IMG/VR virus record: IMGVR_UViG_3300036715_000626
Span: 141,016-205,015 of that record
Length of the DNA: 64,000 nucleotides
Reading direction: 5' to 3' (one strand)
In this document: one piece after another, positions 24,593 through 63,659 of the stretch
Layout of the letters: each line of letters begins with the position of its first letter
Numbering within the stretch: position 1 is the first letter of the stretch
Notes under the pieces: model-generated
What the model was told of the DNA's origin: nothing
Seen by the model: only the letters and a program-made list of their open reading frames with translations
Databases searched by the model: none
Translations under genes and position numbers: made by a program

Positions 24593-26905
24593 ATGGACAC
24601 TAAACAGCTGTTATCTGACTCGAAATACTTTGAGTCATACGCTAGATATTTGGACGACAAAGGTCGTTATGAAACATGGGATGAAGCTGTAGAGCGTGTA
24701 ATGGGGATGCATAAGACATACTATGCTGACAAACTGACTCCTGAACTTATTGGACTACTGGATGAAGTAGAAGAAGCGTATAAAGATAAACTGTTTTTAG
24801 GCTCACAAAGAGCTCTACAATTCGGCGGAGAACAACTTCTAAAAAATCACTCTAAACTTTATAACTGTACCGCCTCTTATTGCGATCGTGTTGAAGTATT
24901 CGGCGAAATTTTCCATCTCATGCTTTCTGGTTGTGGAGTAGGGTTTAGTGTGCAACAGCAACACATATCTAAACTTCCAAACTTACTACCGCGTGGTGAA
25001 AAGACTGTTACTTATATAGTAGAAGATTCTATTGAAGGTTGGGCTTCTAGTGTTGATGTACTATTAAGTTCATTTTTCGACAATGGTGGTAAACACCCTG
25101 AGTATCACGGGTATCAAATTCATTTTGATTTAAGCAATATACGACCTAAAGGTTCCTTTATTTCAGGTGGATTTAAAGCTCCTGGTCCAGATGGTTTACG
25201 TATGGCTCTCGCTAAAATTGAATTGTTGCTAATTAAACTATTAGAAACAAGTAACGTTATTAATAGTATAACCGTTTATGATATTATTATGCACATAGCA
25301 GATGCCGTTATTTCGGGTGGTGTTCGTAGAGCAGCAACTATTTGTCTGTTCTCTAAAGAAGATACCGATATGATAACTGCTAAAACTGGCGATTGGTATA
25401 CCACTAATCCTCAAAGAGGAAGATCTAATAATTCATGTTTGTTATTACGTAACGATACAACTAGAGAAGAATTTGAAACTATCATGGCAAGTGTTAAAGA
25501 ATACGGTGAACCCGGATTTATTTGGACTGATAGCTTAGAGCTGCTTTTTAACCCATGCGTTGAAATTGGTTTATACGCTAAAACTGCTAGCGGTGTTTCT
25601 GGTTTTTCTATGTGTAACTTAACAGAGATTAATGGCGGTAAAAGTGACAATGCTGATACGTTTTACTTACAATGTAAAGTAGCCTCTATTATGGGAACTT
25701 TACAAGCTGGATACACAGACTTCAAGTTTTTATCACCGGCTACTAAAGAAATTGTTGATCGCGAAGCACTTCTTGGTGTATCTATCACTGGGTGGATGAA
25801 CAATCCTACAGTATTGTTCGATCCGGATATTTTAAAAACTGGAGCTGAAATTGCTAAACAGTGGAACAAGATTACTGCTAAACTTATCGGCATTAATGCA
25901 GCTGCCCGGGTGACTACAGTTAAACCTAGTGGTAATGCGTCAGTGTTGCTAGGAACAGCTTCTGGTATACACGGAGAACATTCTAAACGGTATTTACGGC
26001 ATGTACAATTTAATAAAGAAACAGAGATTGCTAAAGCATTTCTTAAACATAATCCTAAAATGTGTGAGCAAAGTGTATGGGGAACTACTGATATTGTTGT
26101 AGCGTTCCCTATTACTCCTAAAGAAGGGTCTATTTATAAGAAAGATCTATTAGGGGTTAAGCAACTTGAATATGTTGTTAAAGCACAGCGAGATTGGGTT
26201 AATAACGGACGTAATGATGATCTTTGTGTTATGCCATTTCTTAAACATAATGTTAGTAATACTATCACCGTAGATGATTGGGACAATGTATCTGATTTTA
26301 TTTATGATAACCGTAACTTCTTAGGCGGTGTGTCATTGTTAGCTGCTGGTGGTGATAAGTCGTATCCACAAGCTCCATTTACAGAAGTATTTACTTATGA
26401 CGAGATCGTTTCTAAATACGGTGAAAATACTTTATTCACATCAGCACTTATTGAAGCTGGATTAACAGCATTTAATAATGATTTATGGGCAGCTATCAAT
26501 ACAGCACTTGGTTATGGCGAGCAGCTTAAAGATAGTCGTCTTGACGAACTTCGTACTAAATTGAACTCAGTTATTGGTAATGAAGTATTGCTCGAAGAAG
26601 GTGAAAAAAATAGTCTTTATGAATCTATTAATAACGCTATTCAATATAGCGGGGTTCTCGGTGAAAGTAGTATTGATTTACTTAAGCGCGACTTTGTACG
26701 TCGTTTCAATAAGTTTGCTAAACGGTTTGAATCCGCACATGTATGTGCTGACTGTCTTAAGGATGTATATAATCTGCATAAGTGGTCTAATATACAACTT
26801 AACTTCACAGATGTAGATTGGTTAGTGCATTTAACAGAAAAAAAATACGTTGACGTTAATACCTTAGCGGCACAAGCATGTTCTGGCGGTAAATGCGAGA
26901 TTTAA
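24593..26905 (+). CDS. nrdJ: Ribonucleotide reductase, probably class II (NrdJ-like, adenosylcobalamin-dependent)
   Basis: RYETWDEAVERV, LYNC, GCGVGFS, GGVRRAA, FNPCVEI thiyl Cys, CNLTEIN, TTVKPSG and C-terminal CSGGKCEI; no small-subunit gene in the window. Confidence 0.8.
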   Translation: MDTKQLLSDSKYFESYARYLDDKGRYETWDEAVERVMGMHKTYYADKLTPELIGLLDEVEEAYKDKLFLGSQRALQFGGEQLLKNHSKLYNCTASYCDRVEVFGEIFHLMLSGCGVGFSVQQQHISKLPNLLPRGEKTVTYIVEDSIEGWASSVDVLLSSFFDNGGKHPEYHGYQIHFDLSNIRPKGSFISGGFKAPGPDGLRMALAKIELLLIKLLETSNVINSITVYDIIMHIADAVISGGVRRAATICLFSKEDTDMITAKTGDWYTTNPQRGRSNNSCLLLRNDTTREEFETIMASVKEYGEPGFIWTDSLELLFNPCVEIGLYAKTASGVSGFSMCNLTEINGGKSDNADTFYLQCKVASIMGTLQAGYTDFKFLSPATKEIVDREALLGVSITGWMNNPTVLFDPDILKTGAEIAKQWNKITAKLIGINAAARVTTVKPSGNASVLLGTASGIHGEHSKRYLRHVQFNKETEIAKAFLKHNPKMCEQSVWGTTDIVVAFPITPKEGSIYKKDLLGVKQLEYVVKAQRDWVNNGRNDDLCVMPFLKHNVSNTITVDDWDNVSDFIYDNRNFLGGVSLLAAGGDKSYPQAPFTEVFTYDEIVSKYGENTLFTSALIEAGLTAFNNDLWAAINTALGYGEQLKDSRLDELRTKLNSVIGNEVLLEEGEKNSLYESINNAIQYSGVLGESSIDLLKRDFVRRFNKFAKRFESAHVCADCLKDVYNLHKWSNIQLNFTDVDWLVHLTEKKYVDVNTLAAQACSGGKCEI

Positions 26906-54663: not shown

Positions 54664-54698
54664 TAACAGTACTACCGACATAGTCGGTAGTACTGTTA
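54664..54698 (-). terminator. Hairpin closing the signalling cassette
   Basis: 16-bp stem taacagtactaccgac-ata-gtcggtagtactgtta overlapping the porin stop. Confidence 0.75.
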
Positions 54699-55886
54699 GA
54701 AATCTGAATACCATTGTAGCATAATAGAACTTGATGATGTAACACTATCTTTAATAGTATCATTATTACCATATTCAGGAGTAAATCCTTTATAAGTACT
54801 AACTCCATCGGAATCATAATGACAGTATCTTAGTTTAAGTAGGTTATCTTTATTTAGCGATACTCCTATACTGGCGTTAATAGTTGTTCCTATATCAGCA
54901 TACGACAACAGCGATATCGGTTTACCGGCTAATAAACTATGGTATCCAGGAGATTTGTAAGCGTACTCGATTCCGAATGACATATCCTTATTCCAGATGA
55001 CGTCATCTACTTCTTTTTTAAATCCAGCAGTTATACTATAACCAGCTGTGTCATAACCACCAAAGTAATAGCCGTCATCTTCAAAAGGTTTCTTAGTAGG
55101 AGAGAGTTGTTCATTGTCACCAGATGATTTAGTTAATACCACACTACCATAATAAGTAAATCCAGTATTCTCTTCGTCACTATATGTAAAAGCTCCTCCA
55201 AGTATATCTGAAGCTATAATAGGGTTACTATTGATAACTTGTTCTATCTTGTAATAGTTAACTTCTAAATACAGATTATCCAACTGATGTTTATCTATAA
55301 TAAAATAACCACCGGTATTTTTATAACTATCGTAGGAAACCGGACCGCTACTAGCATCATAATCGTAGAATGATTTAAAATATTTATCAAAGTTTATCTT
55401 ACCACCGCTTAAAGTATGTTCCTTAGTTGGTTTATAGGTAAGTATGATTCCTTGCATTGTTACATCGTTTACATTATACAATCCGTTACCTAAACGAGTA
55501 CCATTATATGCCATTTCATAAAGAGTGCCTTTTCTAAAAGGAAACAAACCAACTGACACAGAAACATCTTTAAAGATGTTATATGTATAATACAGTTCAT
55601 TCAGATAGATAGCTTTCATCTTAGTGACATCATCTTTAACAATGCTGTTGTATACAGAATTATCTGTATAATATATACCTGGTGAAAAAGTAAACTTACT
55701 ATTACAAAAGTAGAAATCGTTATTAACAACAACGTCTACTGTATCAATATGCGAAGATATGTTCTTCCCATTCTCTTTATAAGTAGATAACGCGCTTGTT
55801 AGCTCTGCATTACCAGACATGTCGTATTTGAAATCAACAGGGTATAAAAAAGAGAAACATAAAACCATAAAAACGATGAACTTCAT
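54696..55886 (-). CDS. Outer-membrane beta-barrel protein / putative porin (DUF3373-like)
   Basis: Signal peptide, alternating aromatic/polar strands, IYLNELYYTY...VSVG.FP and SFGIEYAYKS.GY motifs, and a C-terminal Phe signature (MLQWYSDF). Confidence 0.78.
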   Translation of the reverse strand: MKFIVFMVLCFSFLYPVDFKYDMSGNAELTSALSTYKENGKNISSHIDTVDVVVNNDFYFCNSKFTFSPGIYYTDNSVYNSIVKDDVTKMKAIYLNELYYTYNIFKDVSVSVGLFPFRKGTLYEMAYNGTRLGNGLYNVNDVTMQGIILTYKPTKEHTLSGGKINFDKYFKSFYDYDASSGPVSYDSYKNTGGYFIIDKHQLDNLYLEVNYYKIEQVINSNPIIASDILGGAFTYSDEENTGFTYYGSVVLTKSSGDNEQLSPTKKPFEDDGYYFGGYDTAGYSITAGFKKEVDDVIWNKDMSFGIEYAYKSPGYHSLLAGKPISLLSYADIGTTINASIGVSLNKDNLLKLRYCHYDSDGVSTYKGFTPEYGNNDTIKDSVTSSSSIMLQWYSDF

Positions 55887-56173
55887 CGTGGATCCTCCAA
55901 GTCGGTATTTTCAAAACTTCTATAACTAACAGAGGTTACTTCTTTATCGATACACTCTTTTAGTAGATGTTTATCTTTCACAGATAAGGGTAATTTTGTA
56001 TACAATTGTAATTTATTATTATTATAGGCCCGTAACCAGCCTTTCGGCTTTTTTATATTCATGTCAATACCGTATTTATTAAATACATTTTCGCAGTATT
56101 GTTCTGGTTGGTCTGGGTATATGTTAGTTGCTATTAAACAGTTAAAAAATAATAATAGGATAAATTTATTCAT
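55883..56173 (-). CDS. Small exported (periplasmic) protein
   Basis: Signal peptide MNKFILLLFFNCLIA, two mature Cys, ATGA-coupled to the porin gene. Confidence 0.7.
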   Translation of the reverse strand: MNKFILLLFFNCLIATNIYPDQPEQYCENVFNKYGIDMNIKKPKGWLRAYNNNKLQLYTKLPLSVKDKHLLKECIDKEVTSVSYRSFENTDLEDPR

Positions 56174-56193: not shown

Positions 56194-57594
56194 TTAATCA
56201 TCGCGTCTCGGTTTAACAGGAATAGTTATTTTGAACAACGTCCCATCTTTAGACGTATTTATCAGCTTAACATCCCCACCGGAATTAACAGCGATTCCTT
56301 TTGTAAATGATAGACCAGCTCCTCTTGGGACAATACTGTCCTTAAGTATACCAATCTTAACCATGAATTTAAGGAACCAAGATCTATTATTAATATTTTC
56401 ACCTTGCATAGTTTTAGTAGTATACCCATAGCTAAATATTTCATTTGTTTCTACTATATTACCAGCTCTATCTCTGATACCTCTACCGTTATCGGAGAAA
56501 TAAATATTAAGTTTATACTTACTTGGTAATAACTCAGCTCCGATAGTGATGACCGTAGCTTTAGCTTCTATACTATTAGTAGTATGAGCATGTATTATAT
56601 TTAATAGATCGCCATTAGTCATACCATAACCGACAGCATAATTCTTTAATATATCGAGGTTATTATAAACCACGGTTACTTTATTAACCTTCAAACTGTT
56701 GTTTGTTTTTATAATATTATCTATAATACTATGTATCGCTGTATTACCGTTACTGTATTTTATATGTTTACTGGCAGCCATTTGATTTAATGGTGCTTCT
56801 AAACGTTCTATAGCAAACTTCATCTTTAAGAAATAGTTCTTAGCTATATCGTCATTAATTAGATCTTTATTGCGTAAAACACAATCAGCACATTTTGTAG
56901 TATCTACATCAGTTTCAGAGGTGCATAGATTACATATCCCGGACTTACTATATGAACATGGGAATAGTGTAGAATATAAGTCCCATACTAATGTTTTAAT
57001 AAGAGCTACTGGCATACCCATTTCATGGTGCGCAGATTCTGACATATCTCTCTGTAGTTTATTTTCTAATCCTATCTTATACGACGTTTTCTCAATAGCG
57101 GCATTACGGTTTTCTATGTATAGCTGTTTAAGAAATATGTAGCTATACAATAAAAAAAATATGAACGAGTTTAAATACATAATATTAAGAAATGTATCTA
57201 TGTAACGCTTATCGTTAACAACGATCGTATGATCATTATATCTAAGTACGGTCTTAAGATCAGCAGTAAAACTTCCCAAATATTTAGCCTGATCTGGTTG
57301 AGCAGGAGTTAATAATAAATACCCATCTTTACCTAAGATGTAATTCATATTACCATCTGTAATAGTTTCACATGACACTACACTACACATAAGACTAAGG
57401 TCTTCTCCTTCTCTACTTACAATAGTAGAGAGCTTCTTAATATAATCAGTCATAGTTCCTTTATAAATAGAATGCACTGTAGATACTTCTATTATTAGGA
57501 AAATTATAAAAAACATTATATAGTACTTAATAAATTTATATATTGTTTTGCTATTAAAAAACAGCATGAACTTATCAATGTCTATTTGTAACAT
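56194..57594 (-). CDS. Membrane-bound sensor histidine kinase
   Basis: Two TM helices flank a ~95-aa periplasmic domain. H-box ESAHHEMGMPV, N-box NIIHAHTTNSIEA, G1 FSDNGRGI, F-box IFSYGYTTK and G2 RGAGLS...GGDV...GTLFKITIP are all present. Confidence 0.93.
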   Translation of the reverse strand: MLQIDIDKFMLFFNSKTIYKFIKYYIMFFIIFLIIEVSTVHSIYKGTMTDYIKKLSTIVSREGEDLSLMCSVVSCETITDGNMNYILGKDGYLLLTPAQPDQAKYLGSFTADLKTVLRYNDHTIVVNDKRYIDTFLNIMYLNSFIFFLLYSYIFLKQLYIENRNAAIEKTSYKIGLENKLQRDMSESAHHEMGMPVALIKTLVWDLYSTLFPCSYSKSGICNLCTSETDVDTTKCADCVLRNKDLINDDIAKNYFLKMKFAIERLEAPLNQMAASKHIKYSNGNTAIHSIIDNIIKTNNSLKVNKVTVVYNNLDILKNYAVGYGMTNGDLLNIIHAHTTNSIEAKATVITIGAELLPSKYKLNIYFSDNGRGIRDRAGNIVETNEIFSYGYTTKTMQGENINNRSWFLKFMVKIGILKDSIVPRGAGLSFTKGIAVNSGGDVKLINTSKDGTLFKITIPVKPRRDD

Positions 57595-57598
57595 GACC

Positions 57599-58228
57599 TT
57601 ACTCGTACAAGAAACTGTTTATACGGGATACTCTATCAGAGTTTTTATTCATATAGTAGTTGTTAATATTTAAACCGGTTACTGTTTCAAATTTATTAAT
57701 ATAATACATAATATCCGCATTGCGGCGGTTCATGGTATGCGCAGTACTAAATAGTATTTTAGCATTAGGGTTCTTATCTAGAATAAGAATAGCGATGTCC
57801 ACACCATCGAATTCTACATAAGCTCCATCTTGCAGCTTAACGATATAACCAAGTGTTATATCTAAGATAGCGTAATCGACTTTACCATTTTCAATACTAC
57901 AATACTTATGTGCCATTAACCCTGCTCTAGGATCAAGACATTTAACCAAAGTGAAATCGTTTAAAACATCCTTCTGGTACAAACGTTTTATATTTTTAAA
58001 ATCTACTGAATAAAGTATGTATGTTTCTGGAATATCATCCATAATAAATAGATATGGTTTGTCACAGCCTACACAAGATACTTCTGCTGAGGGAACACTA
58101 GTATAGTCAATAGTTGTATCATATACTGTTTTAGCATGTGTTTCTGTTATAGCTTCCAGTACTGGAGATATAGCCGAAGTATTATCTTTCTTAAATAGTC
58201 TGGTTAATAGCTTTATATATTTTAGCAT
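57599..58228 (-). CDS. Stand-alone response regulator receiver (CheY-like) protein
   Basis: LFIMDD acidic pair, phosphoacceptor in DYAILDITL, FDGVDIA, ILFSTAH and YMNK; no DNA-binding output domain. Confidence 0.88.
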   Translation of the reverse strand: MLKYIKLLTRLFKKDNTSAISPVLEAITETHAKTVYDTTIDYTSVPSAEVSCVGCDKPYLFIMDDIPETYILYSVDFKNIKRLYQKDVLNDFTLVKCLDPRAGLMAHKYCSIENGKVDYAILDITLGYIVKLQDGAYVEFDGVDIAILILDKNPNAKILFSTAHTMNRRNADIMYYINKFETVTGLNINNYYMNKNSDRVSRINSFLYE

Positions 58229-58229
58229 T

Positions 58230-58670
58230 TTAGTTTCCTGTAAAGATTGATCGAATCATATCTAGTATTTCTTTTGTCAATGTTGGATTTATGTAATGTA
58301 TACCTACCAATATAACTATTAAAATACCGATAGAAATTATAATTTTACCGCTATCCGGAAAATCACTAAAAAACCCTTTACTAGGTTTAACAACAACAGG
58401 TGCAGCTTCAGAATTAACATTCTTTTTTAAACTAGAAAGCATTTCAATGTTAGCATCTATTAATTTATTTAAAGTTACTATTTGACTAAACTTCATAGTT
58501 TGCATAGAGGATTTATAATTACTATGTAACAATATTAATGTTTCGAATACTTCATCAGTTACATCTTTTAATTGTACTAAACGTGTAAAGTCATCATTGT
58601 TATCATTTTCAATATGAGTGTCATATATTTCATCTTTTAGAGCAAGCAATCTTTTTTCTACATTATCCAT
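58230..58670 (-). CDS. Helical protein with C-terminal transmembrane anchor
   Basis: About 105-aa helical N-domain, then IIISIGILIVILVGIHYI; AGGGAG RBS; stop 1 nt from the receiver start. Confidence 0.7.
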   Translation of the reverse strand: MDNVEKRLLALKDEIYDTHIENDNNDDFTRLVQLKDVTDEVFETLILLHSNYKSSMQTMKFSQIVTLNKLIDANIEMLSSLKKNVNSEAAPVVVKPSKGFFSDFPDSGKIIISIGILIVILVGIHYINPTLTKEILDMIRSIFTGN

Positions 58671-58756: not shown

Positions 58757-59062
58757 TTATTTAGTAACGGTTTTCTCGATGTTAGATAAAACATTTGTTA
58801 TTGGGTTATCCGTACTAGCACTTGTTGATGTGTAGAATCCGTACGCTGCTGCTAGTGCTGCACATATTGTACCATAGAGTACATTGGTTGCTCCGTCTGG
58901 TTTACCCCATGCAAATATCATAACAATACCAATAGTAGATATTACCCATGTTACAAGGATAGTTAAAAGGACTGCTTTTCTAAATCGTGTAGGTTCACCT
59001 TCAGTCCATAGTATAAACTTACGAACATAGGTATTTTCGTTTTTAATAGTTTCTTCTTCCAC
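58757..59062 (-). CDS. Holin-like two-TM membrane protein
   Basis: 101 aa, GTG start with AAGGA RBS; RFRK, then TM1, a short turn, TM2 ending AYGFY, and a polar tail. Confidence 0.55.
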   Translation of the reverse strand: MEEETIKNENTYVRKFILWTEGEPTRFRKAVLLTILVTWVISTIGIVMIFAWGKPDGATNVLYGTICAALAAAYGFYTSTSASTDNPITNVLSNIEKTVTK

Positions 59063-59112
59063 ACAGTATCCTTAATTTTAAAATAATCACTAAAGATCAA
59101 AAAAATAACCTA

Positions 59113-59138
59113 GTATGAAGGTCATATGACCTTCATAC
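59113..59138 (-). terminator. Perfect 26-bp palindrome overlapping a stop codon
   Basis: gtatgaaggtcat|atgaccttcatac with an A-tract at 59099-59105. Confidence 0.7.
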
Positions 59139-59625
59139 CATTTTTAAGATTAAAGATCATGATTAGCGCATTATTAATCACGATCTCTATTACAGGGGGT
59201 TTCCCGAAGTCATAATCGACTAACTCTTTCTCCGGTACTTGTTTAGAACCCGTATTAATCGGGATCGTGTACATACCGGGATACTCACCTCTGGTAATGC
59301 TACCATTGGCAAGATATAGAACATTTATACCATCAGTGTATAAATCATTCTCTTCGGTGATTTTAATAACATCATTACTAGCACTACTAGTAAAATGTTC
59401 TATAAGTTCCCCTAAGTGACCTATTCGGTAAATATCGTGGTTAAAGATATTTTCATCTTTAGCTAAACGCTTACCGGAATTAATATAAAACAAAATACTA
59501 CCAACACTTCCATAACGTGCTGTATACAAATTGGTATAGAACACCGATCCAAAGATACGATGTTCTACTTGCTTAATTAGGACAATACTGTCTATCTTAT
59601 TTTGTTCTACTACAAATATGGACAT
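59122..59625 (-). CDS. Hypothetical protein
   Basis: Start reassigned to ATG 59625 (MSIFVVEQ) behind GAAGGAGG; a CATATTAT variant lies at 59656-59663. Confidence 0.65.
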   Translation of the reverse strand: MSIFVVEQNKIDSIVLIKQVEHRIFGSVFYTNLYTARYGSVGSILFYINSGKRLAKDENIFNHDIYRIGHLGELIEHFTSSASNDVIKITEENDLYTDGINVLYLANGSITRGEYPGMYTIPINTGSKQVPEKELVDYDFGKPPVIEIVINNALIMIFNLKNGMKVI

Positions 59626-59687: not shown

Positions 59688-59715
59688 AGTAGTAACCGTA
59701 TATACGGTTACTACT
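59688..59715 (-). terminator. Perfect 28-bp palindrome
   Basis: agtagtaaccgtat|atacggttactact with an A-tract at 59669-59676. Confidence 0.75.
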
Positions 59716-61228
59716 TAGTACGCACCATTTTAGGATAATCCATAAGAATATATGTTTTTGCTTTAGGCTTAATAATCTTCGTTCGATCATGATGCATTTT
59801 AACTTGTTTAGGTATATCCTTAGAATAAAGATAACCATAGTATACTTCACGACCATCATCAAGTTTTCTTAACCTTCCAACATTTTGCAAGTTAGCTTGG
59901 ATACTACTTATTAAAACTGTTTGTAATACAGCAATAAGATTAGGTATATCAAGAGCCGTACCAGCACTTAGAGTAGTACTAAAACAGATATCACTTTCTA
60001 ATACGTTTACTAACGGGTCATCTTCCACATATCTTCGTACGTCAAATTGTTTATACTTACGATTAAAATGATTTGCTAGGACAGTACACATACGTATAGA
60101 CGCTGCGAAAATCAGAATCCGATCGCCCGGTTTCCTACGACTAATATATAAGTCCGCTATATAGTAATCGATCATGTTAATATACTCTCGCAAGAATACA
60201 CTATTGCGCATAAGCGTTTGTTCGAATAAGATATGGTTATAACCCTTAACCCCCATGAACCTAATTCCGCGTAACGATTCAATCTTATAGTTAATAGCAA
60301 TAACGTTAGCATATTTATCATACTCTACGATATTACTTATACGATTTGTAGCAGGAAATAGATTCATATACATTTTATTCACATCTGGTTGATTACTAAG
60401 TAACGTTGCAGATGAACCTATAAGGTATAATGGGTTAAGATATAAAATACATTTGAAGATACTATAAAATTCTTCATGAGTCTCATCATTATAGATAATG
60501 CCTATACCAAGAGTTTCAAGTATCTTATCGGGAGTTATCGGAAAAGTATAGCTATGACATTCCTCAAAATCGGTAATAAGATTCATCATGGTTCTACTAC
60601 TAAAAATAACAAACTTATACGAAGTATTTTTATCTTCAATAAGATGTAATAAACTTTCTTCACCCTGTACGATATAAATATCGTTATCAGTTACATCAGT
60701 ATACTTCTTAAGATCGATTATCCATTTCTCGATATACTTAGGTCTTAATAATAGACCTGTTCGCATATTGAGTTTAGCAACGGCAGCCATCGCTATGACC
60801 GATTTACCGCGACCTGTCTGTAGGTCAATAAGTGTTATTTTAGTGGCGTTTTCAGCTACTAATGCGTTTATATAAATATGTTGATAATCTCTAATAGTAA
60901 AAGACGAGTTAACTTTAATGTTAATGGGTTTAATATTAAAATTCTTACGATATTCCACATGTATCATATCTCTAGTGACATAATGGCTACCAAGTAACAG
61001 CATGAAATCTTTTAAATTCATTATACTGAATCTATACGTATTGGTATGTGGTAAATGTGACATGAATATCTTATCACGCTGTCGTATATTTCGTTTAAGT
61101 ATTTTATCATATACAAAATCATAAGTAGACAATTCGTTTATCATAATGTTTAAAACACTATTCAGTTTTTCATCAAGCAGCTTAACGGTGAATGATGTGT
61201 TAAATATTACTATTTCTAAGCGTTTCAT
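59711..61228 (-). CDS. Superfamily 2 helicase (phiKZ gp75-like)
   Basis: IRDYQ Q-motif, LQTGRGKS, DETH, SAT, SAGTALDIPNL and QNVGRLR. Confidence 0.88.
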   Translation of the reverse strand: MKRLEIVIFNTSFTVKLLDEKLNSVLNIMINELSTYDFVYDKILKRNIRQRDKIFMSHLPHTNTYRFSIMNLKDFMLLLGSHYVTRDMIHVEYRKNFNIKPINIKVNSSFTIRDYQHIYINALVAENATKITLIDLQTGRGKSVIAMAAVAKLNMRTGLLLRPKYIEKWIIDLKKYTDVTDNDIYIVQGEESLLHLIEDKNTSYKFVIFSSRTMMNLITDFEECHSYTFPITPDKILETLGIGIIYNDETHEEFYSIFKCILYLNPLYLIGSSATLLSNQPDVNKMYMNLFPATNRISNIVEYDKYANVIAINYKIESLRGIRFMGVKGYNHILFEQTLMRNSVFLREYINMIDYYIADLYISRRKPGDRILIFAASIRMCTVLANHFNRKYKQFDVRRYVEDDPLVNVLESDICFSTTLSAGTALDIPNLIAVLQTVLISSIQANLQNVGRLRKLDDGREVYYGYLYSKDIPKQVKMHHDRTKIIKPKAKTYILMDYPKMVRTK

Positions 61229-61646: not shown

Positions 61647-63659
61647 TTAGTTTACAATTGATCCGTAGTAGTCCAAGATAGTCTTATTAGGAGATAACAG
61701 AACATCCAGTGGGTGGTCGCAAGCATTGCGTCCATTAAACGTACCTGGTGAAAGTATGGTATGTATAACACGTTCCCATGCATATGAACCACCAGCACTT
61801 CTATTAGGTAGGATACCTTCGATTTTCATCAACTGTGTGTCATCACTGTTTCTACCGAGATCGTAATTCTTGTCTTTAATAGACATGATACTAAATGCAT
61901 ATACAATAACTTCTAACAAAGCAATGTTAACATTTAGTTTGGTATTAACCGTATCGAACAATGATTGTAGTAATGACTCTTGTGTTTCAGAACTACGCAC
62001 ACCTTTAACAATTTCCATATGTTTAAACATAGAAGTAACATCCTTAGAAAGTGCCAAGAAGTTAAATTCTACTTGCGGTAGAACAATAAACGGAATAGTG
62101 GATTTCCATCCTGAAAGATCCATTACGTATCTATCCATATCGTCCAGTACATACCCAGTATTGATAATGTATTTTAGGAATTCATACGTAAATGATCCGT
62201 ACTTACTTCCTTCCTTAACAACGATTGGATAATACTTATCTTTACCATTATCATTTACTACCAGTATAAACGAATCGATACGTGTCACCCGTGAGATGTT
62301 CAGTGTATAGACATCAACGGTTTTGTTCAAGTCTTTAATACCGAATGCCGCAAACTGTGTAACGATCATCCGGTAAGAGATATTCTTCTTACCGATAATT
62401 CCTGGTTTGAAACCATAACCATTCTTGCTCTTAACATTGAAGAACATCTCAGCATTCTTATCCAAAACAATATCACCGGTAGTTGCGTTCGAGGTAATAT
62501 GTTTAGTAGATAGGATATTCTGAGAAATTTGTTGTGTTAATGTAGTACTACAGATATGTCCAATACTAGTATGTTTATGAATACCATATGATAGTTCTCC
62601 AAAACATGCTGTACATATTTGTCGTTTATCGGGTAGTTTACATTTAGTAGCAATACGCAACTTAATGGTGTTACCTTCTAAGTATTTATGCTTCTTAGTG
62701 ATAACCTCTTCACGCCCAGTATCTTCATTAAGGAATCGTTTACCAATAAGATTATCGATATCGGATTTACCAGTAATCTCAGGACCTCGTACATACCAAT
62801 GTAAGTAATCTTTGTTACCACAGTCACCGTCAACTAGATTTTCTACCATCATAGTAACCAATTGTAACTCACGCGCTGAATACTCACTCGTTTGAATAGC
62901 TTTATTCGATAAGAACAACGCTTTAGCGCCTGAACGTGATTCAACAGCTAAGTCATACAGATCCGACATACCTAACGTAAATGACGACGCGATAGGGTAT
63001 TTAAAGATACTACTATCAATCTCAGTAACATAACCACGAGACGCAAGCATTTGATTAACTTGGTTCTTATTGAAAGTTCCTGAGATATAACCACGAGCTA
63101 TGATGTTATTTCGTAACTCTGGTTTAGTGTAAATAATTCGTTCTAGTATTTCATAAGTCTTATTAACGGTTTCAAGAGTCTTTTCAGTATAGACATCTTT
63201 CATAGCCGATATTAACTCTGGATCGAACTGGATATCCAAAAAGTCTTTAATATTAATAGACACCGCATAGTGAATATTATCATACGTAACTTCATTATAG
63301 ATATCGTTAAAGATATTATACATACGTTCATACACTACTGGTAAGAACTCTCTGTTATCAAGAGGTTTGATATACGCCACAACAATAGCTTCCAGTATAA
63401 CTTCAAAAGCTTTGTTAATTGTTTTAGCGGTATAAATACCATTTGTGTAGAAGTTAGTAATACTGAACTCAGACCGGATAGCTAATTCTGGTACAAGTTC
63501 CAATACACCAAACACATAACGGTTAACTATGATCTCACGCGATGTAAGATTAAGTACTACGTTATCTTCAAAAAGAACGGAATGGTTTTGTTTTAACCCA
63601 CTCATAAGTTCTTTAGGTTTAAATTTCATAAACTCTCTTACAGGTACTACTTTAGACAT
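61647..63659 (-). CDS. Non-virion RNA polymerase beta'-like subunit (phiKZ gp74-like)
   Basis: QMLASRGYVTEID, bridge-helix-like ESRSGAKAL...SEYSARELQL, GDCG, Zn site C......ICTACFG, and trigger-loop-like TQQISQNILSTKH; adjacent to the SF2 helicase. Confidence 0.88.
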   Translation of the reverse strand: MSKVVPVREFMKFKPKELMSGLKQNHSVLFEDNVVLNLTSREIIVNRYVFGVLELVPELAIRSEFSITNFYTNGIYTAKTINKAFEVILEAIVVAYIKPLDNREFLPVVYERMYNIFNDIYNEVTYDNIHYAVSINIKDFLDIQFDPELISAMKDVYTEKTLETVNKTYEILERIIYTKPELRNNIIARGYISGTFNKNQVNQMLASRGYVTEIDSSIFKYPIASSFTLGMSDLYDLAVESRSGAKALFLSNKAIQTSEYSARELQLVTMMVENLVDGDCGNKDYLHWYVRGPEITGKSDIDNLIGKRFLNEDTGREEVITKKHKYLEGNTIKLRIATKCKLPDKRQICTACFGELSYGIHKHTSIGHICSTTLTQQISQNILSTKHITSNATTGDIVLDKNAEMFFNVKSKNGYGFKPGIIGKKNISYRMIVTQFAAFGIKDLNKTVDVYTLNISRVTRIDSFILVVNDNGKDKYYPIVVKEGSKYGSFTYEFLKYIINTGYVLDDMDRYVMDLSGWKSTIPFIVLPQVEFNFLALSKDVTSMFKHMEIVKGVRSSETQESLLQSLFDTVNTKLNVNIALLEVIVYAFSIMSIKDKNYDLGRNSDDTQLMKIEGILPNRSAGGSYAWERVIHTILSPGTFNGRNACDHPLDVLLSPNKTILDYYGSIVN

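What the first reader, a model, noticed from the sequence alone, without database searches (positions are those of the whole stretch)
56320..57033. Histidine kinase with a five-Cys insert in the DHp hairpin and an extended ATP lid
Seen: after the unusual H-box (AHHEMGMP) comes C-x7-CNLC-x10-CADC, placed between the two DHp helices. Between YTTK and RGAGL lies a ~28-aa insert (NRSWFLKFMVKIGIL, amphipathic). The N-box has HAHTTN in place of NLxxN. Known: canonical HisKA domains have a short loop there, and paired CxxC motifs bind Zn or Fe-S. Inference: this is a second, cytoplasmic redox or metal input, or a specificity element insulating the phage pair from host regulators.
Basis: partly seen in the sequence, partly recalled or inferred. 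Interest (0 to 1): 0.62.

Follow-up and report, generated by a model that had tools for sequence, protein, structure and literature searches.

The report
Phage histidine kinase with four-cysteine hairpin
A giant phage from microbial mats carries its own membrane sensor kinase and partner receiver protein, and the kinase has a conserved four-cysteine knob, probably metal-binding, inserted at the tip of its dimerisation helices, a place where no cysteine cluster has been described in the kinases I could check.

Summary
ORF 56194..57594 (-) encodes a 466-aa transmembrane histidine kinase. It has C213-x7-C221-x2-C224-x10-C235-x2-C238 between the two DHp helices and 29 residues between TTK394 and R424GAGL.

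Three points need correcting:
- Only four of the five cysteines are conserved. C224 occurs in 2 of 28 homologs.
- The H-box (H190-E-x3-P195) is canonical in its core.
- The N-box Asn (N340) is invariant.

The protein belongs to a large family known only from metagenomes, with 218 clusters at E<=1e-30. I found no member in GenBank phages or in 185,579 species genomes. Catalytic residues are invariant in 153 of 153 representatives.

The Cys4 element is a roughly 23-residue insert with the motif Y-P-C-x7-C...C-x2-C. It is present in 52 of 153 representatives, clustered on the tree, and gained or lost at least 12 times. It is therefore accessory, not catalytic. The long ATP lid is family-wide and independent of the cysteines.

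The upstream gene is a single-domain receiver. The pair sits in a conserved operon with a secreted Cys protein and a porin-like barrel.

My best reading is a structural Zn(Cys)4 knuckle at the DHp tip that tunes partner docking or autophosphorylation geometry. A redox or Fe-S sensing role is not excluded. No metal or activity data exist.

The parts
56194..57594 (-). Histidine kinase gene, 466 aa (P0001).
   Evidence: There are 28 full-length homologs and 218 clusters at E<=1e-30. The AF2 model has a DHp plus CA architecture. Foldseek hits are solved histidine kinases at E 1e-8 to 1e-7.
57463..57525 (-). TM1 (residues about 24-44). The N-terminus is Lys-rich, so it is probably cytoplasmic.
   Evidence: Kyte-Doolittle 19-residue windows score 1.6-2.06 over residues 17-45. 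AF2 predicts a helix at 15-62.
57196..57462 (-). Extracytoplasmic sensor domain (residues 45-133). It carries the conserved pair C70-x4-C75 (57385-57387 and 57370-57372).
   Evidence: C70 and C75 are each present in 149 of 153 representatives. AF2 gives a small alpha/beta fold with pLDDT 80-90. The Atlas search gave only weak leads to Cache/GAPES-type sensors.
57127..57195 (-). TM2 (residues about 134-156), continuing into the signalling helix.
   Evidence: The stretch FLNIMYLNSFIFFLLYSYIFL is hydrophobic. It is part of AF2 helix 129-210.
56965..57117 (-). Linker plus DHp helix alpha1 (residues 160-210), with the H-box S-A-H-H-E-M-G-M-P. The phospho-acceptor H190 is at 57025-57027.
   Evidence: H190 is present in 153 of 153, E191 in 149 of 153 and P195 in 148 of 153. 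The residue at H+4 is Met here and Thr in 58 of 153.
56860..56964 (-). DHp hairpin insert (residues 211-245). Four cysteines are conserved: C213 (56956-56958), C221 (56932-56934), C235 (56890-56892) and C238 (56881-56883). C224 (56923-56925) is not conserved.
   Evidence: Conservation is. The motif Y-P-C-x7-C-[DSN]-[FL]-x(7-20)-C-x2-C is. AF2 pLDDT is 51-61 here. No curated zinc-finger family matches.
56758..56859 (-). DHp helix alpha2 (residues 246-279), ending in the family motif K-H-I-K-Y-S-N-G.
   Evidence: AF2 predicts a helix at 246-279. K276 is present in 147 of 153.
56209..56736 (-). Catalytic ATP-binding (CA, GHKL) domain, residues 287-462. It holds the N-box N340 (56575-56577), G1 D368-N-G-R-G372 (56479-56493), the F-box I-F-S-Y-G-Y-T-T-K394 and G2 R424-G-A-G-L428 (56311-56325).
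   Evidence: Pfam HATPase_c scores 22.5 bits, below the 26.4 cut-off. N340, D368, G372, K394 and G425 are each present in 153 of 153. The PDB profile search hits YycG, ZraS, FixL and CheA.
56326..56412 (-). Extended ATP-lid insert (residues 395-423, 29 aa) with the hydrophobic, basic helix S-W-F-L-K-F-M-V-K-I-G.
   Evidence: The median length is 30 aa across the family and does not depend on the Cys class. Only 16 of 153 representatives have a lid of 5-16 aa. AF2 predicts a helix at 406-413 with low pLDDT.
57599..58228 (-). Single-domain response regulator (P0002, 209 aa). The receiver fold spans residues about 57-209, preceded by a roughly 55-aa low-confidence N-terminal extension. There is no output domain.
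   Evidence: D65, D123 and K179 are invariant; D64 and T162 are present in at least 90% of 27 sequences. The AF2 model has pLDDT 86. All top Foldseek matches are receiver domains. The gene lies 4 nt upstream of the HK, and this arrangement holds in 11 of 11 contexts. Complex prediction gave weak support.
58230..58670 (-). 146-aa helical protein with a C-terminal TM segment. It is the first conserved gene of the module.
   Evidence: A gene of about 140-195 aa is present upstream of the receiver in all 11 contexts. It has no family assignment.
55883..56173 (-). 96-aa secreted Cys-containing protein (P0003).
   Evidence: It has a signal-peptide-like N-terminus, and W46, R48 and C74 are invariant. 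It is present in 10 of 11 contexts.
54696..55886 (-). 396-aa porin-like outer-membrane beta-barrel (P0004), with a signal peptide and a C-terminal Phe.
   Evidence: The Atlas search by features gave porin families at 0.96-0.97. By structure the best match was DUF3373 (Campylobacterota) at TM 0.76. Alignment A5 has 54% mean column identity. It is present in 10 of 11 contexts.
54664..54698 (-). Terminator-like hairpin (16-bp stem plus T run) that ends the operon.
59111..59140 (-). Terminator-like hairpin upstream of the operon (13-bp stem plus T run). It marks the 5' boundary of the transcription unit.

Best explanation
P0001 is a functional, phage-encoded transmembrane sensor histidine kinase. 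It autophosphorylates on H190 and passes the phosphoryl group to D123 of the single-domain receiver encoded 4 nt upstream.

Its DHp hairpin carries a roughly 23-residue accessory insert. The four conserved cysteines of the insert (C213, C221, C235, C238; Y-P-C-x7-C...C-x2-C) most likely chelate one Zn2+ per protomer. This would fold the otherwise variable loop into a rigid knuckle at the membrane-distal tip of the four-helix bundle.

The hairpin sets bundle handedness, and so whether autophosphorylation runs in cis or in trans. It also lies next to the surface where receivers dock. The knuckle is therefore inferred to tune autophosphorylation geometry and/or receiver docking, rather than to be needed for catalysis.

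What is shown:
- kinase and receiver identity;
- Cys4 conservation with fixed spacing;
- the insert's nature as an insertion and its repeated gain or loss;
- the conserved operon.

What is inferred:
- zinc as the ligand;
- a structural or tuning role.
For: Kinase identity:
- H190, N340, D368, G372, K394 and G425 are each present in 153 of 153 family representatives.
- The AF2 model has a DHp plus CA architecture.
- Foldseek matches solved kinases (HK853, ZraS, CpxA, DesK, YF1) at E 1e-8 to 1e-7.

Cys4 unit:
- C213, C221, C235 and C238 are kept in 25-27 of 28 homologs at 28-62% identity. C224 is kept in only 2 of 28.
- In 52 Cys4 representatives the first spacing is 7 in 49 and the last spacing is 2 in 51. 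The middle spacing ranges from 7 to 20.
- In non-Cys columns the commonest residue has a mean share of only 35%. Invariant ligands around a free loop are the usual signature of a small metal-stabilised module.

Insert character:
- The segment P195..K276 has a median of 55 residues in members with no Cys and 78 in members with four.

Accessory nature:
- Cys4 is clustered on the tree (14 changes against 43 for shuffled labels) but needs at least 12 changes, while the catalytic residues stay invariant.

Location:
- The topology is N-in, TM1, periplasmic loop, TM2. This puts the insert in the reducing cytoplasm, where Cys4 sites normally bind metal rather than form disulfides (established knowledge).

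Hairpin function:
- The hairpin determines handedness and cis or trans autophosphorylation (PMC6798134).

Partner:
- The receiver fold and the conserved active-site residues D64, D65, D123, T162 and K179 are supported.
- The receiver sits next to the kinase in 11 of 11 contexts.
- Complex prediction gave weak support: score 0.45 against 0.00 for the best of 3 controls. The mark was reached by 58 of 80 solved complexes and 2 of 110 mismatched pairs. At a score of 0.60 or under it was reached by only 7 of those 80 solved complexes and by both mismatches that passed. The runs agree in at least 88% of contacts and the partner's pLDDT is at least 83.
Against: - There is no metal, spectroscopic or activity measurement.
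- AF2 models the insert with low confidence (pLDDT 51-61), and no coordinates were available to check thiolate geometry.
- The first Cys pair is C-x7-C, not a classical CxxC knuckle.
- No curated zinc-finger family matches the insert. The only hints are chance-level: GntX N-terminus at E 0.095 and RING at E 0.005 in one homolog.
- Four-Cys sets in other kinases bind Fe-S clusters, as in NreB and AirS (PMC8774646), so sequence alone cannot settle the ligand.
- No feature of the receiver co-varies with Cys4 in the 9 paired contexts aligned. This gives no support to a specific docking role.
Confidence: 0.5

Rival explanations
1. Thiol-based redox switch. The hairpin cysteines, with or without bound Zn, are oxidised by cytoplasmic oxidants or quinones. 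Disulfide formation or zinc release then changes DHp packing and switches the kinase. This would give the phage a second, cytoplasmic input on the host's redox state.
For: - Conserved but non-catalytic cysteines in or near the DHp act this way in AccS. There, C694 and C697 lie 13 and 16 residues after the phospho-His, C863 lies in the CA domain, and oxidised quinones inactivate the kinase (PMC6456745).
- SrrB has a regulatory disulfide in its CA domain (PMC8774646).
- The Cys4 insert here is dispensable for the kinase core, as expected of a regulatory add-on.
- The phage comes from microbial-mat and sediment samples, where redox gradients are steep.
- Twenty family members keep a single CxxC at the hairpin tip.
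Against: - The positions are not homologous to those of AccS. Here the cysteines lie at H+23 to H+48, in an insert, whereas in AccS they lie at H+13 and H+16.
- Fixed spacing of all four cysteines around a variable loop is more typical of a metal site than of a reactive-thiol pair.
- No experiment has been done.
- Repeated loss in about two thirds of the family argues against a core sensory role.
Confidence: 0.2
2. Iron-sulfur cluster site. The four cysteines ligate a [2Fe-2S] or [4Fe-4S] cluster, and its oxidation or loss reports O2, NO or sulfide to the kinase core.
For: - Four-Cys Fe-S sites regulate the kinases NreB and AirS (PMC8774646; PMC13478379, listed).
- The habitat is microbial mat and sediment, and one homolog of the partner receiver is labelled as coming from an Arcobacter MAG.
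Against: - In NreB and AirS the cluster sits in an N-terminal sensor domain, not in the DHp.
- The variable middle spacing (7-20 residues) and the lack of any Fe-S family signature do not favour a cluster.
- A phage protein would depend on the host's Fe-S assembly machinery late in infection.
Confidence: 0.1
3. Specificity or insulation element. The knob, whatever holds it together, mainly serves as an extra docking surface. It would let the phage kinase phosphorylate only the phage receiver and exclude host regulators.
For: - The insert lies at the membrane-distal end of the DHp, next to the region where receivers dock. Specificity residues map to the lower DHp helices and, in some kinases, to the loop (established knowledge; I did not re-read the sources).
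- The phage receiver is itself atypical. It has a roughly 13-aa insert in the beta3-alpha3 loop and falls below Pfam thresholds.
- The complex prediction gave weak support: 0.45 against 0.00 for the best of 3 controls, with the calibration counts given under the best explanation.
Against: - The receiver's insert and active-site residues are the same whether the partner kinase has Cys4 (window, L002, L003, L007, L009), a different Cys pattern at the hairpin (L004), a CxxC only (L016), no Cys with a short hairpin (L014) or no Cys with a short lid (L015).
- Family members without the insert must be insulated by other means.
- No interface contacts were returned.
Confidence: 0.15
4. A lineage-specific decoration with no function: the cysteines are chance or relaxed leftovers.
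For: - The insert has been lost or degraded many times.
- C224 is clearly not conserved.
Against: - Four cysteines are kept at fixed spacing in 25-27 of 28 homologs down to 28% identity.
- They are kept in 26 of 28 members of one clade whose end branches are about 0.1-1.3 changes per column.
- The chance probability of the cluster is about 1e-3 for the whole protein.
Confidence: 0.05

Closest known systems
Canonical HisKA-type transmembrane sensor kinases (HK853, EnvZ, CpxA, ZraS, WalK/YycG)
   Same: - N-in topology with two TM helices and a periplasmic sensor domain.
- DHp four-helix-bundle element with an H-E-x3-P H-box.
- CA domain with N, G1, F and G2 boxes.
- An adjacent cognate receiver.
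- The fold matches these structures.
   Different: - A roughly 23-aa Cys4 insert in the normally short hairpin.
- About 29 residues between the F and G2 boxes, where 16 family members have only 5-16.
- An N-box of the N-S-I-E-A type that drew CheA and MutL matches.
- No Pfam HisKA hit, and HATPase_c below the gathering score.
- H+4 is Met, so the E-x-x-T/N phosphatase motif is not kept in this copy (the motif's role is from memory).
- Encoded by a phage.
Thiol-switch kinases AccS (Azoarcus), RegB and SrrB
   Same: Conserved cysteines in the autokinase module that are not needed for catalysis but modulate it (PMC6456745; PMC8774646).
   Different: - AccS has a CxxC inside DHp alpha1 (H+13 and H+16) plus one Cys in the CA domain. 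SrrB has a disulfide in the CA domain.
- None of these has a four-Cys insert in the hairpin loop.
- There is no sequence relationship beyond the kinase core.
Fe-S kinases NreB and AirS
   Same: A set of cysteines binds a metal cofactor that controls the kinase.
   Different: The cofactor site is in the N-terminal PAS/GAF-type sensor domain, not in the DHp.
Virus-encoded histidine kinases: C. difficile phage phiCDHM1 AgrC, giant-virus kinases and 'uncultured Caudovirales' BaeS-like entries in BFVD
   Same: A histidine kinase carried in a viral genome (PMC3901668).
   Different: - All BFVD matches are at most 17% identical.
- GenBank phages hold no relative at E<=1e-3.
- Here the kinase comes with its own receiver, a secreted protein and a porin-like barrel in one conserved operon.
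Small Zn(Cys)4 modules inserted in loops (zinc ribbons or knuckles; the Rad50 zinc hook for the CxxC-only members)
   Same: Two Cys pairs with invariant spacing inside each pair and a variable linker between them. The analogy is from memory.
   Different: - The first pair is C-x7-C rather than CxxC.
- No curated zinc-finger profile matches.
- Metal binding is untested.

Membership tests
Two-component sensor histidine kinase (class I, DHp + CA) | Phospho-acceptor His in an H-box on DHp helix alpha1 | tested here: met
   H190 is present in 153 of 153, E191 in 149 of 153 and P195 in 148 of 153. It lies on AF2 helix 129-210.
Two-component sensor histidine kinase (class I, DHp + CA) | GHKL ATP-binding domain with N, G1, F and G2 boxes | tested here: met
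   N340, D368, G372, K394 and G425 are each present in 153 of 153. G370 and G427 are present in 152 of 153, and F387 in 135 of 153.
Two-component sensor histidine kinase (class I, DHp + CA) | Passes the curated Pfam models (HisKA PF00512; HATPase_c PF02518) | tested here: not met
   There is no HisKA hit. HATPase_c scores 22.5 bits against a cut-off of 26.4. PF02518 is on record for all homologs but one (a 283-aa fragment). The family is too divergent for these models, but the motifs and the fold are met.
Two-component sensor histidine kinase (class I, DHp + CA) | Helical-hairpin DHp followed by an alpha/beta CA fold | tested here: met
   The AF2 model has pLDDT 76.6. Foldseek matches solved kinases at E 6.6e-9 and weaker, probability 1.00.
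Two-component sensor histidine kinase (class I, DHp + CA) | Autophosphorylation and phosphotransfer to a cognate receiver | not testable with these tools
   The receiver is adjacent in 11 of 11 contexts. The complex prediction gave only weak support: 0.45 against 0.00 for the best control.
Response regulator receiver domain (CheY-like), for P0002 | Acidic pair after beta1, phospho-Asp after beta3, Thr/Ser after beta4 and Lys after beta5, on a (beta-alpha)5 fold | tested here: met
   D65, D123 and K179 are invariant; D64 and T162 are present in at least 90% of 27 sequences. The AF2 model has pLDDT 86. All top Foldseek matches are receivers, with target-normalised TM up to 0.70.
Response regulator receiver domain (CheY-like), for P0002 | Passes Pfam Response_reg (PF00072) | tested here: not met
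   Only 2 of 8 members match, with a best E-value of 0.048. The PDB profile search found nothing.
cREC (cyclic-phosphate processing receiver of jumbo phages) | Linked to NAD/ADPr-processing enzymes and never found with histidine kinases | tested here: not met
   The cREC_REC hit has E 0.17. The gene sits next to a kinase in 11 of 11 contexts, which is contrary to the definition in PMC7824862.
Thiol-switch kinases (AccS/RegB type) | Regulatory Cys at the positions described for AccS (H+13 and H+16 in alpha1, plus one in the CA domain) | tested here: not met
   Here the cysteines lie at H+23, H+31, H+45 and H+48 within an insert, and the CA domain has none. The AccS positions are from PMC6456745.
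Thiol-switch kinases (AccS/RegB type) | Kinase activity responds to oxidants or quinones through the cysteines | not testable with these tools
   This needs biochemistry.
Fe-S cluster kinases (NreB/AirS type) | Cys ligands located in an N-terminal cytoplasmic sensor (PAS/GAF) domain | tested here: not met
   The cysteines lie in the DHp hairpin. The N-terminal domain is extracytoplasmic and has only C70 and C75.
Zinc ribbon / zinc knuckle Cys4 modules | Two Cys pairs with conserved intra-pair spacing and a tolerated variable linker | tested here: met
   The spacing is x7 in 49 of 52, x2 in 51 of 52 and x7-20 for the linker.
Zinc ribbon / zinc knuckle Cys4 modules | Match to a curated zinc-finger profile, or demonstrated Zn binding | tested here: inconclusive
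   There is no significant Pfam match on ten hairpin pieces. Metal content cannot be tested here.

The most novel reading that the evidence does not exclude
The Cys4 hairpin is a true cytoplasmic redox or metal switch (Zn-thiolate or Fe-S) built directly into the DHp of a virus-encoded kinase.

On this reading a jumbo phage runs its own envelope-spanning sensory pathway: phage porin, then secreted Cys protein, then the kinase's periplasmic domain. It would combine that signal with the host's cytoplasmic redox state. The output would act through a stand-alone receiver on a phage decision such as lysis timing or developmental progression.
Probability: 0.15. Interest if true: 0.8.

Novelty: new variant of a known kind. 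Interest (0 to 1): 0.55.

Why it matters
Histidine kinases are thought to take their inputs through N-terminal sensor domains. The DHp hairpin is treated as a short passive connector that sets bundle handedness. A conserved metal-type Cys4 module grown into that loop would be a new place to regulate or stabilise the kinase core. It would also be a natural test case for how loop architecture controls cis or trans autophosphorylation and partner choice.

Separately, the family shows that a widespread group of uncultured jumbo phages carries a complete kinase-receiver pair. The family has 218 clusters and no cellular member was found. The pair is linked to a porin-like barrel and a secreted protein. 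This suggests that the phages sense the state of the infected cell's envelope themselves. No function has been assigned to any phage two-component system of this kind.

Tried and rejected
- tblastn and megablast against 50,697 GenBank phage records found no match.
- The single-sequence scan of IMG/VR found nothing. The profile scan found two more viral contigs.
- The scan of 185,579 species genomes returned only generic CA-domain matches, in a Flavobacteriales MAG and in Ureibacillus, and no family member. The scan is pattern-based, so absence is not proven.
- PHROGs has no family for the kinase, the secreted protein or the porin-like barrel, and only a chance-level hit (E 0.035) for the receiver. 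NCBIfam gave only chance-level hits.
- PDB profile searches with the receiver alignment and the porin alignment gave nothing.
- Pfam on ten excised hairpin pieces gave no credible zinc-finger or Fe-S family.
- The Atlas search of the periplasmic domain gave only weak leads, with scores of 0.86 or less.
- I considered that P0002 might be the jumbo-phage cREC domain. I rejected this because cREC is defined as never linked to kinases and because P0002 has the classical conserved active-site residues and the receiver fold.
- I looked for a receiver feature that co-varies with Cys4 or with lid length and found none in 9 contexts.
- I looked for RNA evidence. No RNA run holds the locus.
- The coordinates of the predicted models could not be read, so Cys-Cys distances could not be measured.
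- The Cys columns are 52 of 52 by construction of the class. The unbiased conservation figures are those.
Full report
**What is there**

The finding's span (56320-57033) lies inside one ORF on the minus strand, 56194..57594, which encodes 466 aa (P0001). The window is the last 64 kb of a 205-kb IMG/VR virus record with direct terminal repeats.

- S-A-H-H-E-M-G-M-P.
- Then C213-x7-C221-N-L-C224-x10-C235-A-D-C238.
- 29 residues between Y-T-T-K394 and R424-G-A-G-L, including S-W-F-L-K-F-M-V-K-I-G-I-L.
- H-A-H-T-T-N340.

The protein has only seven cysteines. Five fall within 26 residues, against a Cys frequency of 0.9% in the window's long ORFs. That gives P of about 3e-6 for a given window and about 1e-3 for the whole protein.

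**Is it a kinase?**

Pfam gives only a sub-threshold HATPase_c match (22.5 bits against 26.4) and no HisKA match. PHROGs gives nothing. Three other lines of evidence support a kinase.

- *Homologs.* The word-index search found 28 full-length homologs at 28-62% identity. A profile of these found 218 clusters at E<=1e-30 and 361 at E<=1e-10 among 1.84 billion representatives.
- *Catalytic residues.* In an alignment of 153 full-length representatives, H190, N340, D368, G372, K394 and G425 are each present in 153 of 153. E191 is present in 149, P195 in 148, and G370 and G427 in 152.
- *Fold.* AlphaFold2 (pLDDT 76.6) gives an N-terminal TM helix, a small alpha/beta extracytoplasmic domain, one long helix 129-210 (TM2, linker and DHp alpha1), a poorly defined segment 211-245, helix 246-279 (alpha2) and an alpha/beta CA domain 287-462. 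Foldseek matches solved kinases (YF1, HK853, ZraS, CpxA, DesK, WalK) at E 1e-8 to 1e-7. The PDB profile search hits the CA domains of YycG, ZraS, FixL and CheA.

The H-box core H-E-x3-P is therefore canonical. The Asn of 'HAHTTN' is the invariant N-box Asn, and the following N-S-I-E-A is the motif type that drew CheA and MutL matches.

One real deviation remains. The residue four positions after the His is Met here (Thr in 58 of 153). The E-x-x-T/N phosphatase motif is thus not kept in this copy. The motif's role is from memory.

**The cysteines**

Among the 28 closer homologs, conservation is as follows:

| Residue | Conserved in |
|---|---|
| C213 | 25 of 28 |
| C221 | 27 of 28 |
| C224 | 2 of 28 |
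| C235 | 25 of 28 |
| C238 | 26 of 28 |

The unit is Cys4, not Cys5.

In the 153 representatives the hairpin falls into four classes:

| Class | Number |
|---|---|
| Full C-x(6-8)-C-x(6-20)-C-x(2-3)-C | 52 |
| A single CxxC-type pair | 20 |
| Other partial patterns | 38 |
| No Cys | 43 |

The segment from P195 to K276 has a median of 55 residues without Cys and 78 with four. The Cys4 element is therefore a roughly 23-residue insertion.

Within the Cys4 class the first spacing is 7 in 49 of 52 and the last is 2 in 51 of 52. A Pro precedes the first Cys in 48 of 52. The middle spacing runs from 7 to 20, and in the non-Cys columns the commonest residue has a mean share of only 35%.

On a tree built without the hairpin columns, Cys4 is strongly clustered: 14 changes against 43 for shuffled labels, with 0 of 500 shuffles as low. 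Starred branches still force at least 12 changes. One clade of 28 keeps the motif in 26 members despite end branches of about 0.1-1.3 changes per column.

The element is thus under selection where it exists. It is dispensable for the kinase as such.

**The lid**

The stretch between K394 and R424 has a median of 30 residues in every Cys class. Only 16 of 153 representatives have a lid of 5-16 residues, most of them in one subclade. It contains a conserved hydrophobic, basic helix (consensus S-W-W-K-R-F-L-F-K-L-G) that AF2 models with low confidence. It is only moderately amphipathic.

The long lid is a feature of the family, independent of the cysteines. Its role is unknown.

**Surroundings**

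The gene 4 nt upstream (57599..58228) encodes a 209-aa protein. Residues about 57-209 fold as a receiver domain: AF2 pLDDT is 86, and all top Foldseek matches are response-regulator receivers. D65, D123 and K179 are invariant, and D64 and T162 nearly so, in 27 sequences.

It has no output domain, a low-confidence 55-residue N-terminal extension, and a roughly 13-residue insert in the beta3-alpha3 loop. It falls below Pfam's Response_reg threshold. A chance-level cREC hit is discounted, because cREC is defined as never associated with kinases (PMC7824862).

A complex prediction of two kinase cytoplasmic chains, zinc and the receiver gave weak support:
- The score was 0.45, against 0.00 for the best of 3 controls.
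- The mark was reached by 58 of 80 solved complexes and 2 of 110 mismatched pairs.
- At a score of 0.60 or under it was reached by only 7 of those 80 solved complexes and by both mismatches that passed.
- The runs agree in at least 88% of contacts, and the partner's pLDDT is at least 83.

In all 11 genomic contexts examined, the order [140-195-aa C-terminal-TM protein][receiver][kinase] is kept. In 10 of 11 it is followed by a 76-112-aa secreted Cys protein and a 382-417-aa protein. In the window, that last protein (54696..55886) has a signal peptide and a C-terminal Phe. The Atlas search calls it a porin, with the best structural match to DUF3373 of Campylobacterota at TM 0.76.

Terminator-like hairpins at 59140..59111 and 54698..54664 bracket the unit.

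The contigs that carry the family are 60-222 kb phage contigs. No GenBank phage and none of 185,579 species genomes holds a member. The DNA occurs in microbial-mat and sediment metagenomes. One receiver homolog is labelled 'MAG: Arcobacter sp.', which is a weak host lead.

**How it most likely works**

*Shown:*
- an intact kinase core;
- a cognate-looking receiver;
- a cytoplasmic location for the insert, from the N-in topology;
- four invariant-spacing cysteines around a variable loop;
- repeated gain or loss of the insert.

*Inferred:* in the reducing cytoplasm such a set most often binds Zn2+ and serves to fold a loop that has no hydrophobic core of its own. DHp helices are normally joined by short hairpins whose handedness decides cis or trans autophosphorylation (PMC6798134). 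The lower DHp is where receivers dock. A rigid knuckle there would therefore be expected to fix loop geometry and add surface next to the docking site. I put this at 0.5.

The rivals are:
- a thiol or zinc-release redox switch (0.2; precedent in AccS, PMC6456745, though at non-homologous positions);
- an Fe-S site (0.1; precedents NreB and AirS, though in N-terminal sensor domains);
- a docking or insulation role as the main purpose (0.15; no co-varying receiver feature in 9 contexts);
- no function (0.05).

The first four are not fully exclusive.

**Comparison with what is known**

The protein works like, and by motif and fold is, a class I sensor kinase, although it fails the curated Pfam thresholds. 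The Cys4 hairpin insert has no counterpart among the cysteine- or metal-regulated kinases I could check in the literature (AccS, RegB, SrrB, NreB, AirS). It also matches no curated zinc-finger family.

Virus-encoded kinases are on record, but all are unrelated at the sequence level (17% identity or less). They include phiCDHM1 AgrC (PMC3901668) and the giant-virus and 'uncultured Caudovirales' entries in BFVD.

**Verdict**

The interpretation as a metal-binding unit is reasonable. The interpretation as a second sensory input is untested. I rate this a new variant of a known kind, of moderate interest. The conserved phage operon of kinase, receiver, secreted protein and porin-like barrel is at least as noteworthy as the cysteines.

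Noticed in passing
window 54696..55886 (-) and 55883..56173 (-): The phage encodes a porin-like outer-membrane barrel (Atlas: porin / DUF3373, TM 0.76) and a small secreted Cys protein directly downstream of the kinase. Both are conserved in 10 of 11 related contexts. This suggests an envelope-spanning sensory module.
   Followed up: partly
window 55883..56173 (-); alignment A3: In the small secreted protein, the Cys of 'R-V-C' and the first Cys of 'C-x-C' are both missing only in the window's copy and its closest relative (L006). A paired loss like this is expected if the two form a disulfide in the other copies.
   Followed up: no
window 57370..57387 (-), residues C70 and C75 of the kinase: A C-x4-C pair in the extracytoplasmic domain is conserved in 149 of 153 family representatives. 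That is more conserved than the hairpin cysteines. It is probably a periplasmic disulfide or a ligand site.
   Followed up: partly
window 57599..58228 (-), residues about 124-141 of the receiver: The receiver has a roughly 13-residue insert in the beta3-alpha3 loop, right after the phospho-Asp. The insert is present in all 9 contexts aligned, whatever the Cys or lid class of the partner kinase.
   Followed up: partly
window 54664..54698 and 59111..59140 (-): Two strong terminator-like hairpins (16- and 13-bp stems with T runs) bracket a six-gene unit. The gaps between the five genes from the 146-aa TM protein to the porin are 1, 4 and 20 nt and a 4-nt overlap. The scan found 7 terminator-like sites against 1.3 expected.
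   Followed up: partly
window 58757..59062 (-) and 58230..58670 (-): A 101-aa protein with two TM segments and a 146-aa protein with a C-terminal TM precede the receiver. In L002 two M15 peptidases (endolysin-like) lie just upstream of the module. A link to lysis control is conceivable but untested.
   Followed up: no
window 61647..63659 (-), 59711..61228 (-), 24593..26905 (+): The window also holds an RNA polymerase beta-subunit-like protein (phrog_3015, E 1e-127), a DNA helicase and a ribonucleotide reductase. Most large ORFs (729-1254 aa) have no PHROG match.
   Followed up: no
L008:11407-13199: A related phage contig carries bAvd and a reverse transcriptase (RVT_1) next to a DUF4376 gene, about 4 kb downstream of its kinase module. 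This looks like a diversity-generating retroelement.
   Followed up: no
L004:6402-6857; L006:1323-3890; L002:12632-13366: Related contigs show three further features: an Acb1 (anti-CBASS) gene two genes upstream of the module; a helicase enlarged to 855 aa with a faint LAGLIDADG hit; and a second outer-membrane family gene (DUF481).
   Followed up: no
family-wide (P0167-P0192 subclade): One subclade of the kinase family has a short, canonical lid of 5-10 residues and a long Cys-free helical hairpin. Another 20 representatives keep a single CxxC at the hairpin tip. In a dimer, two such pairs could in principle share one metal.
   Followed up: no
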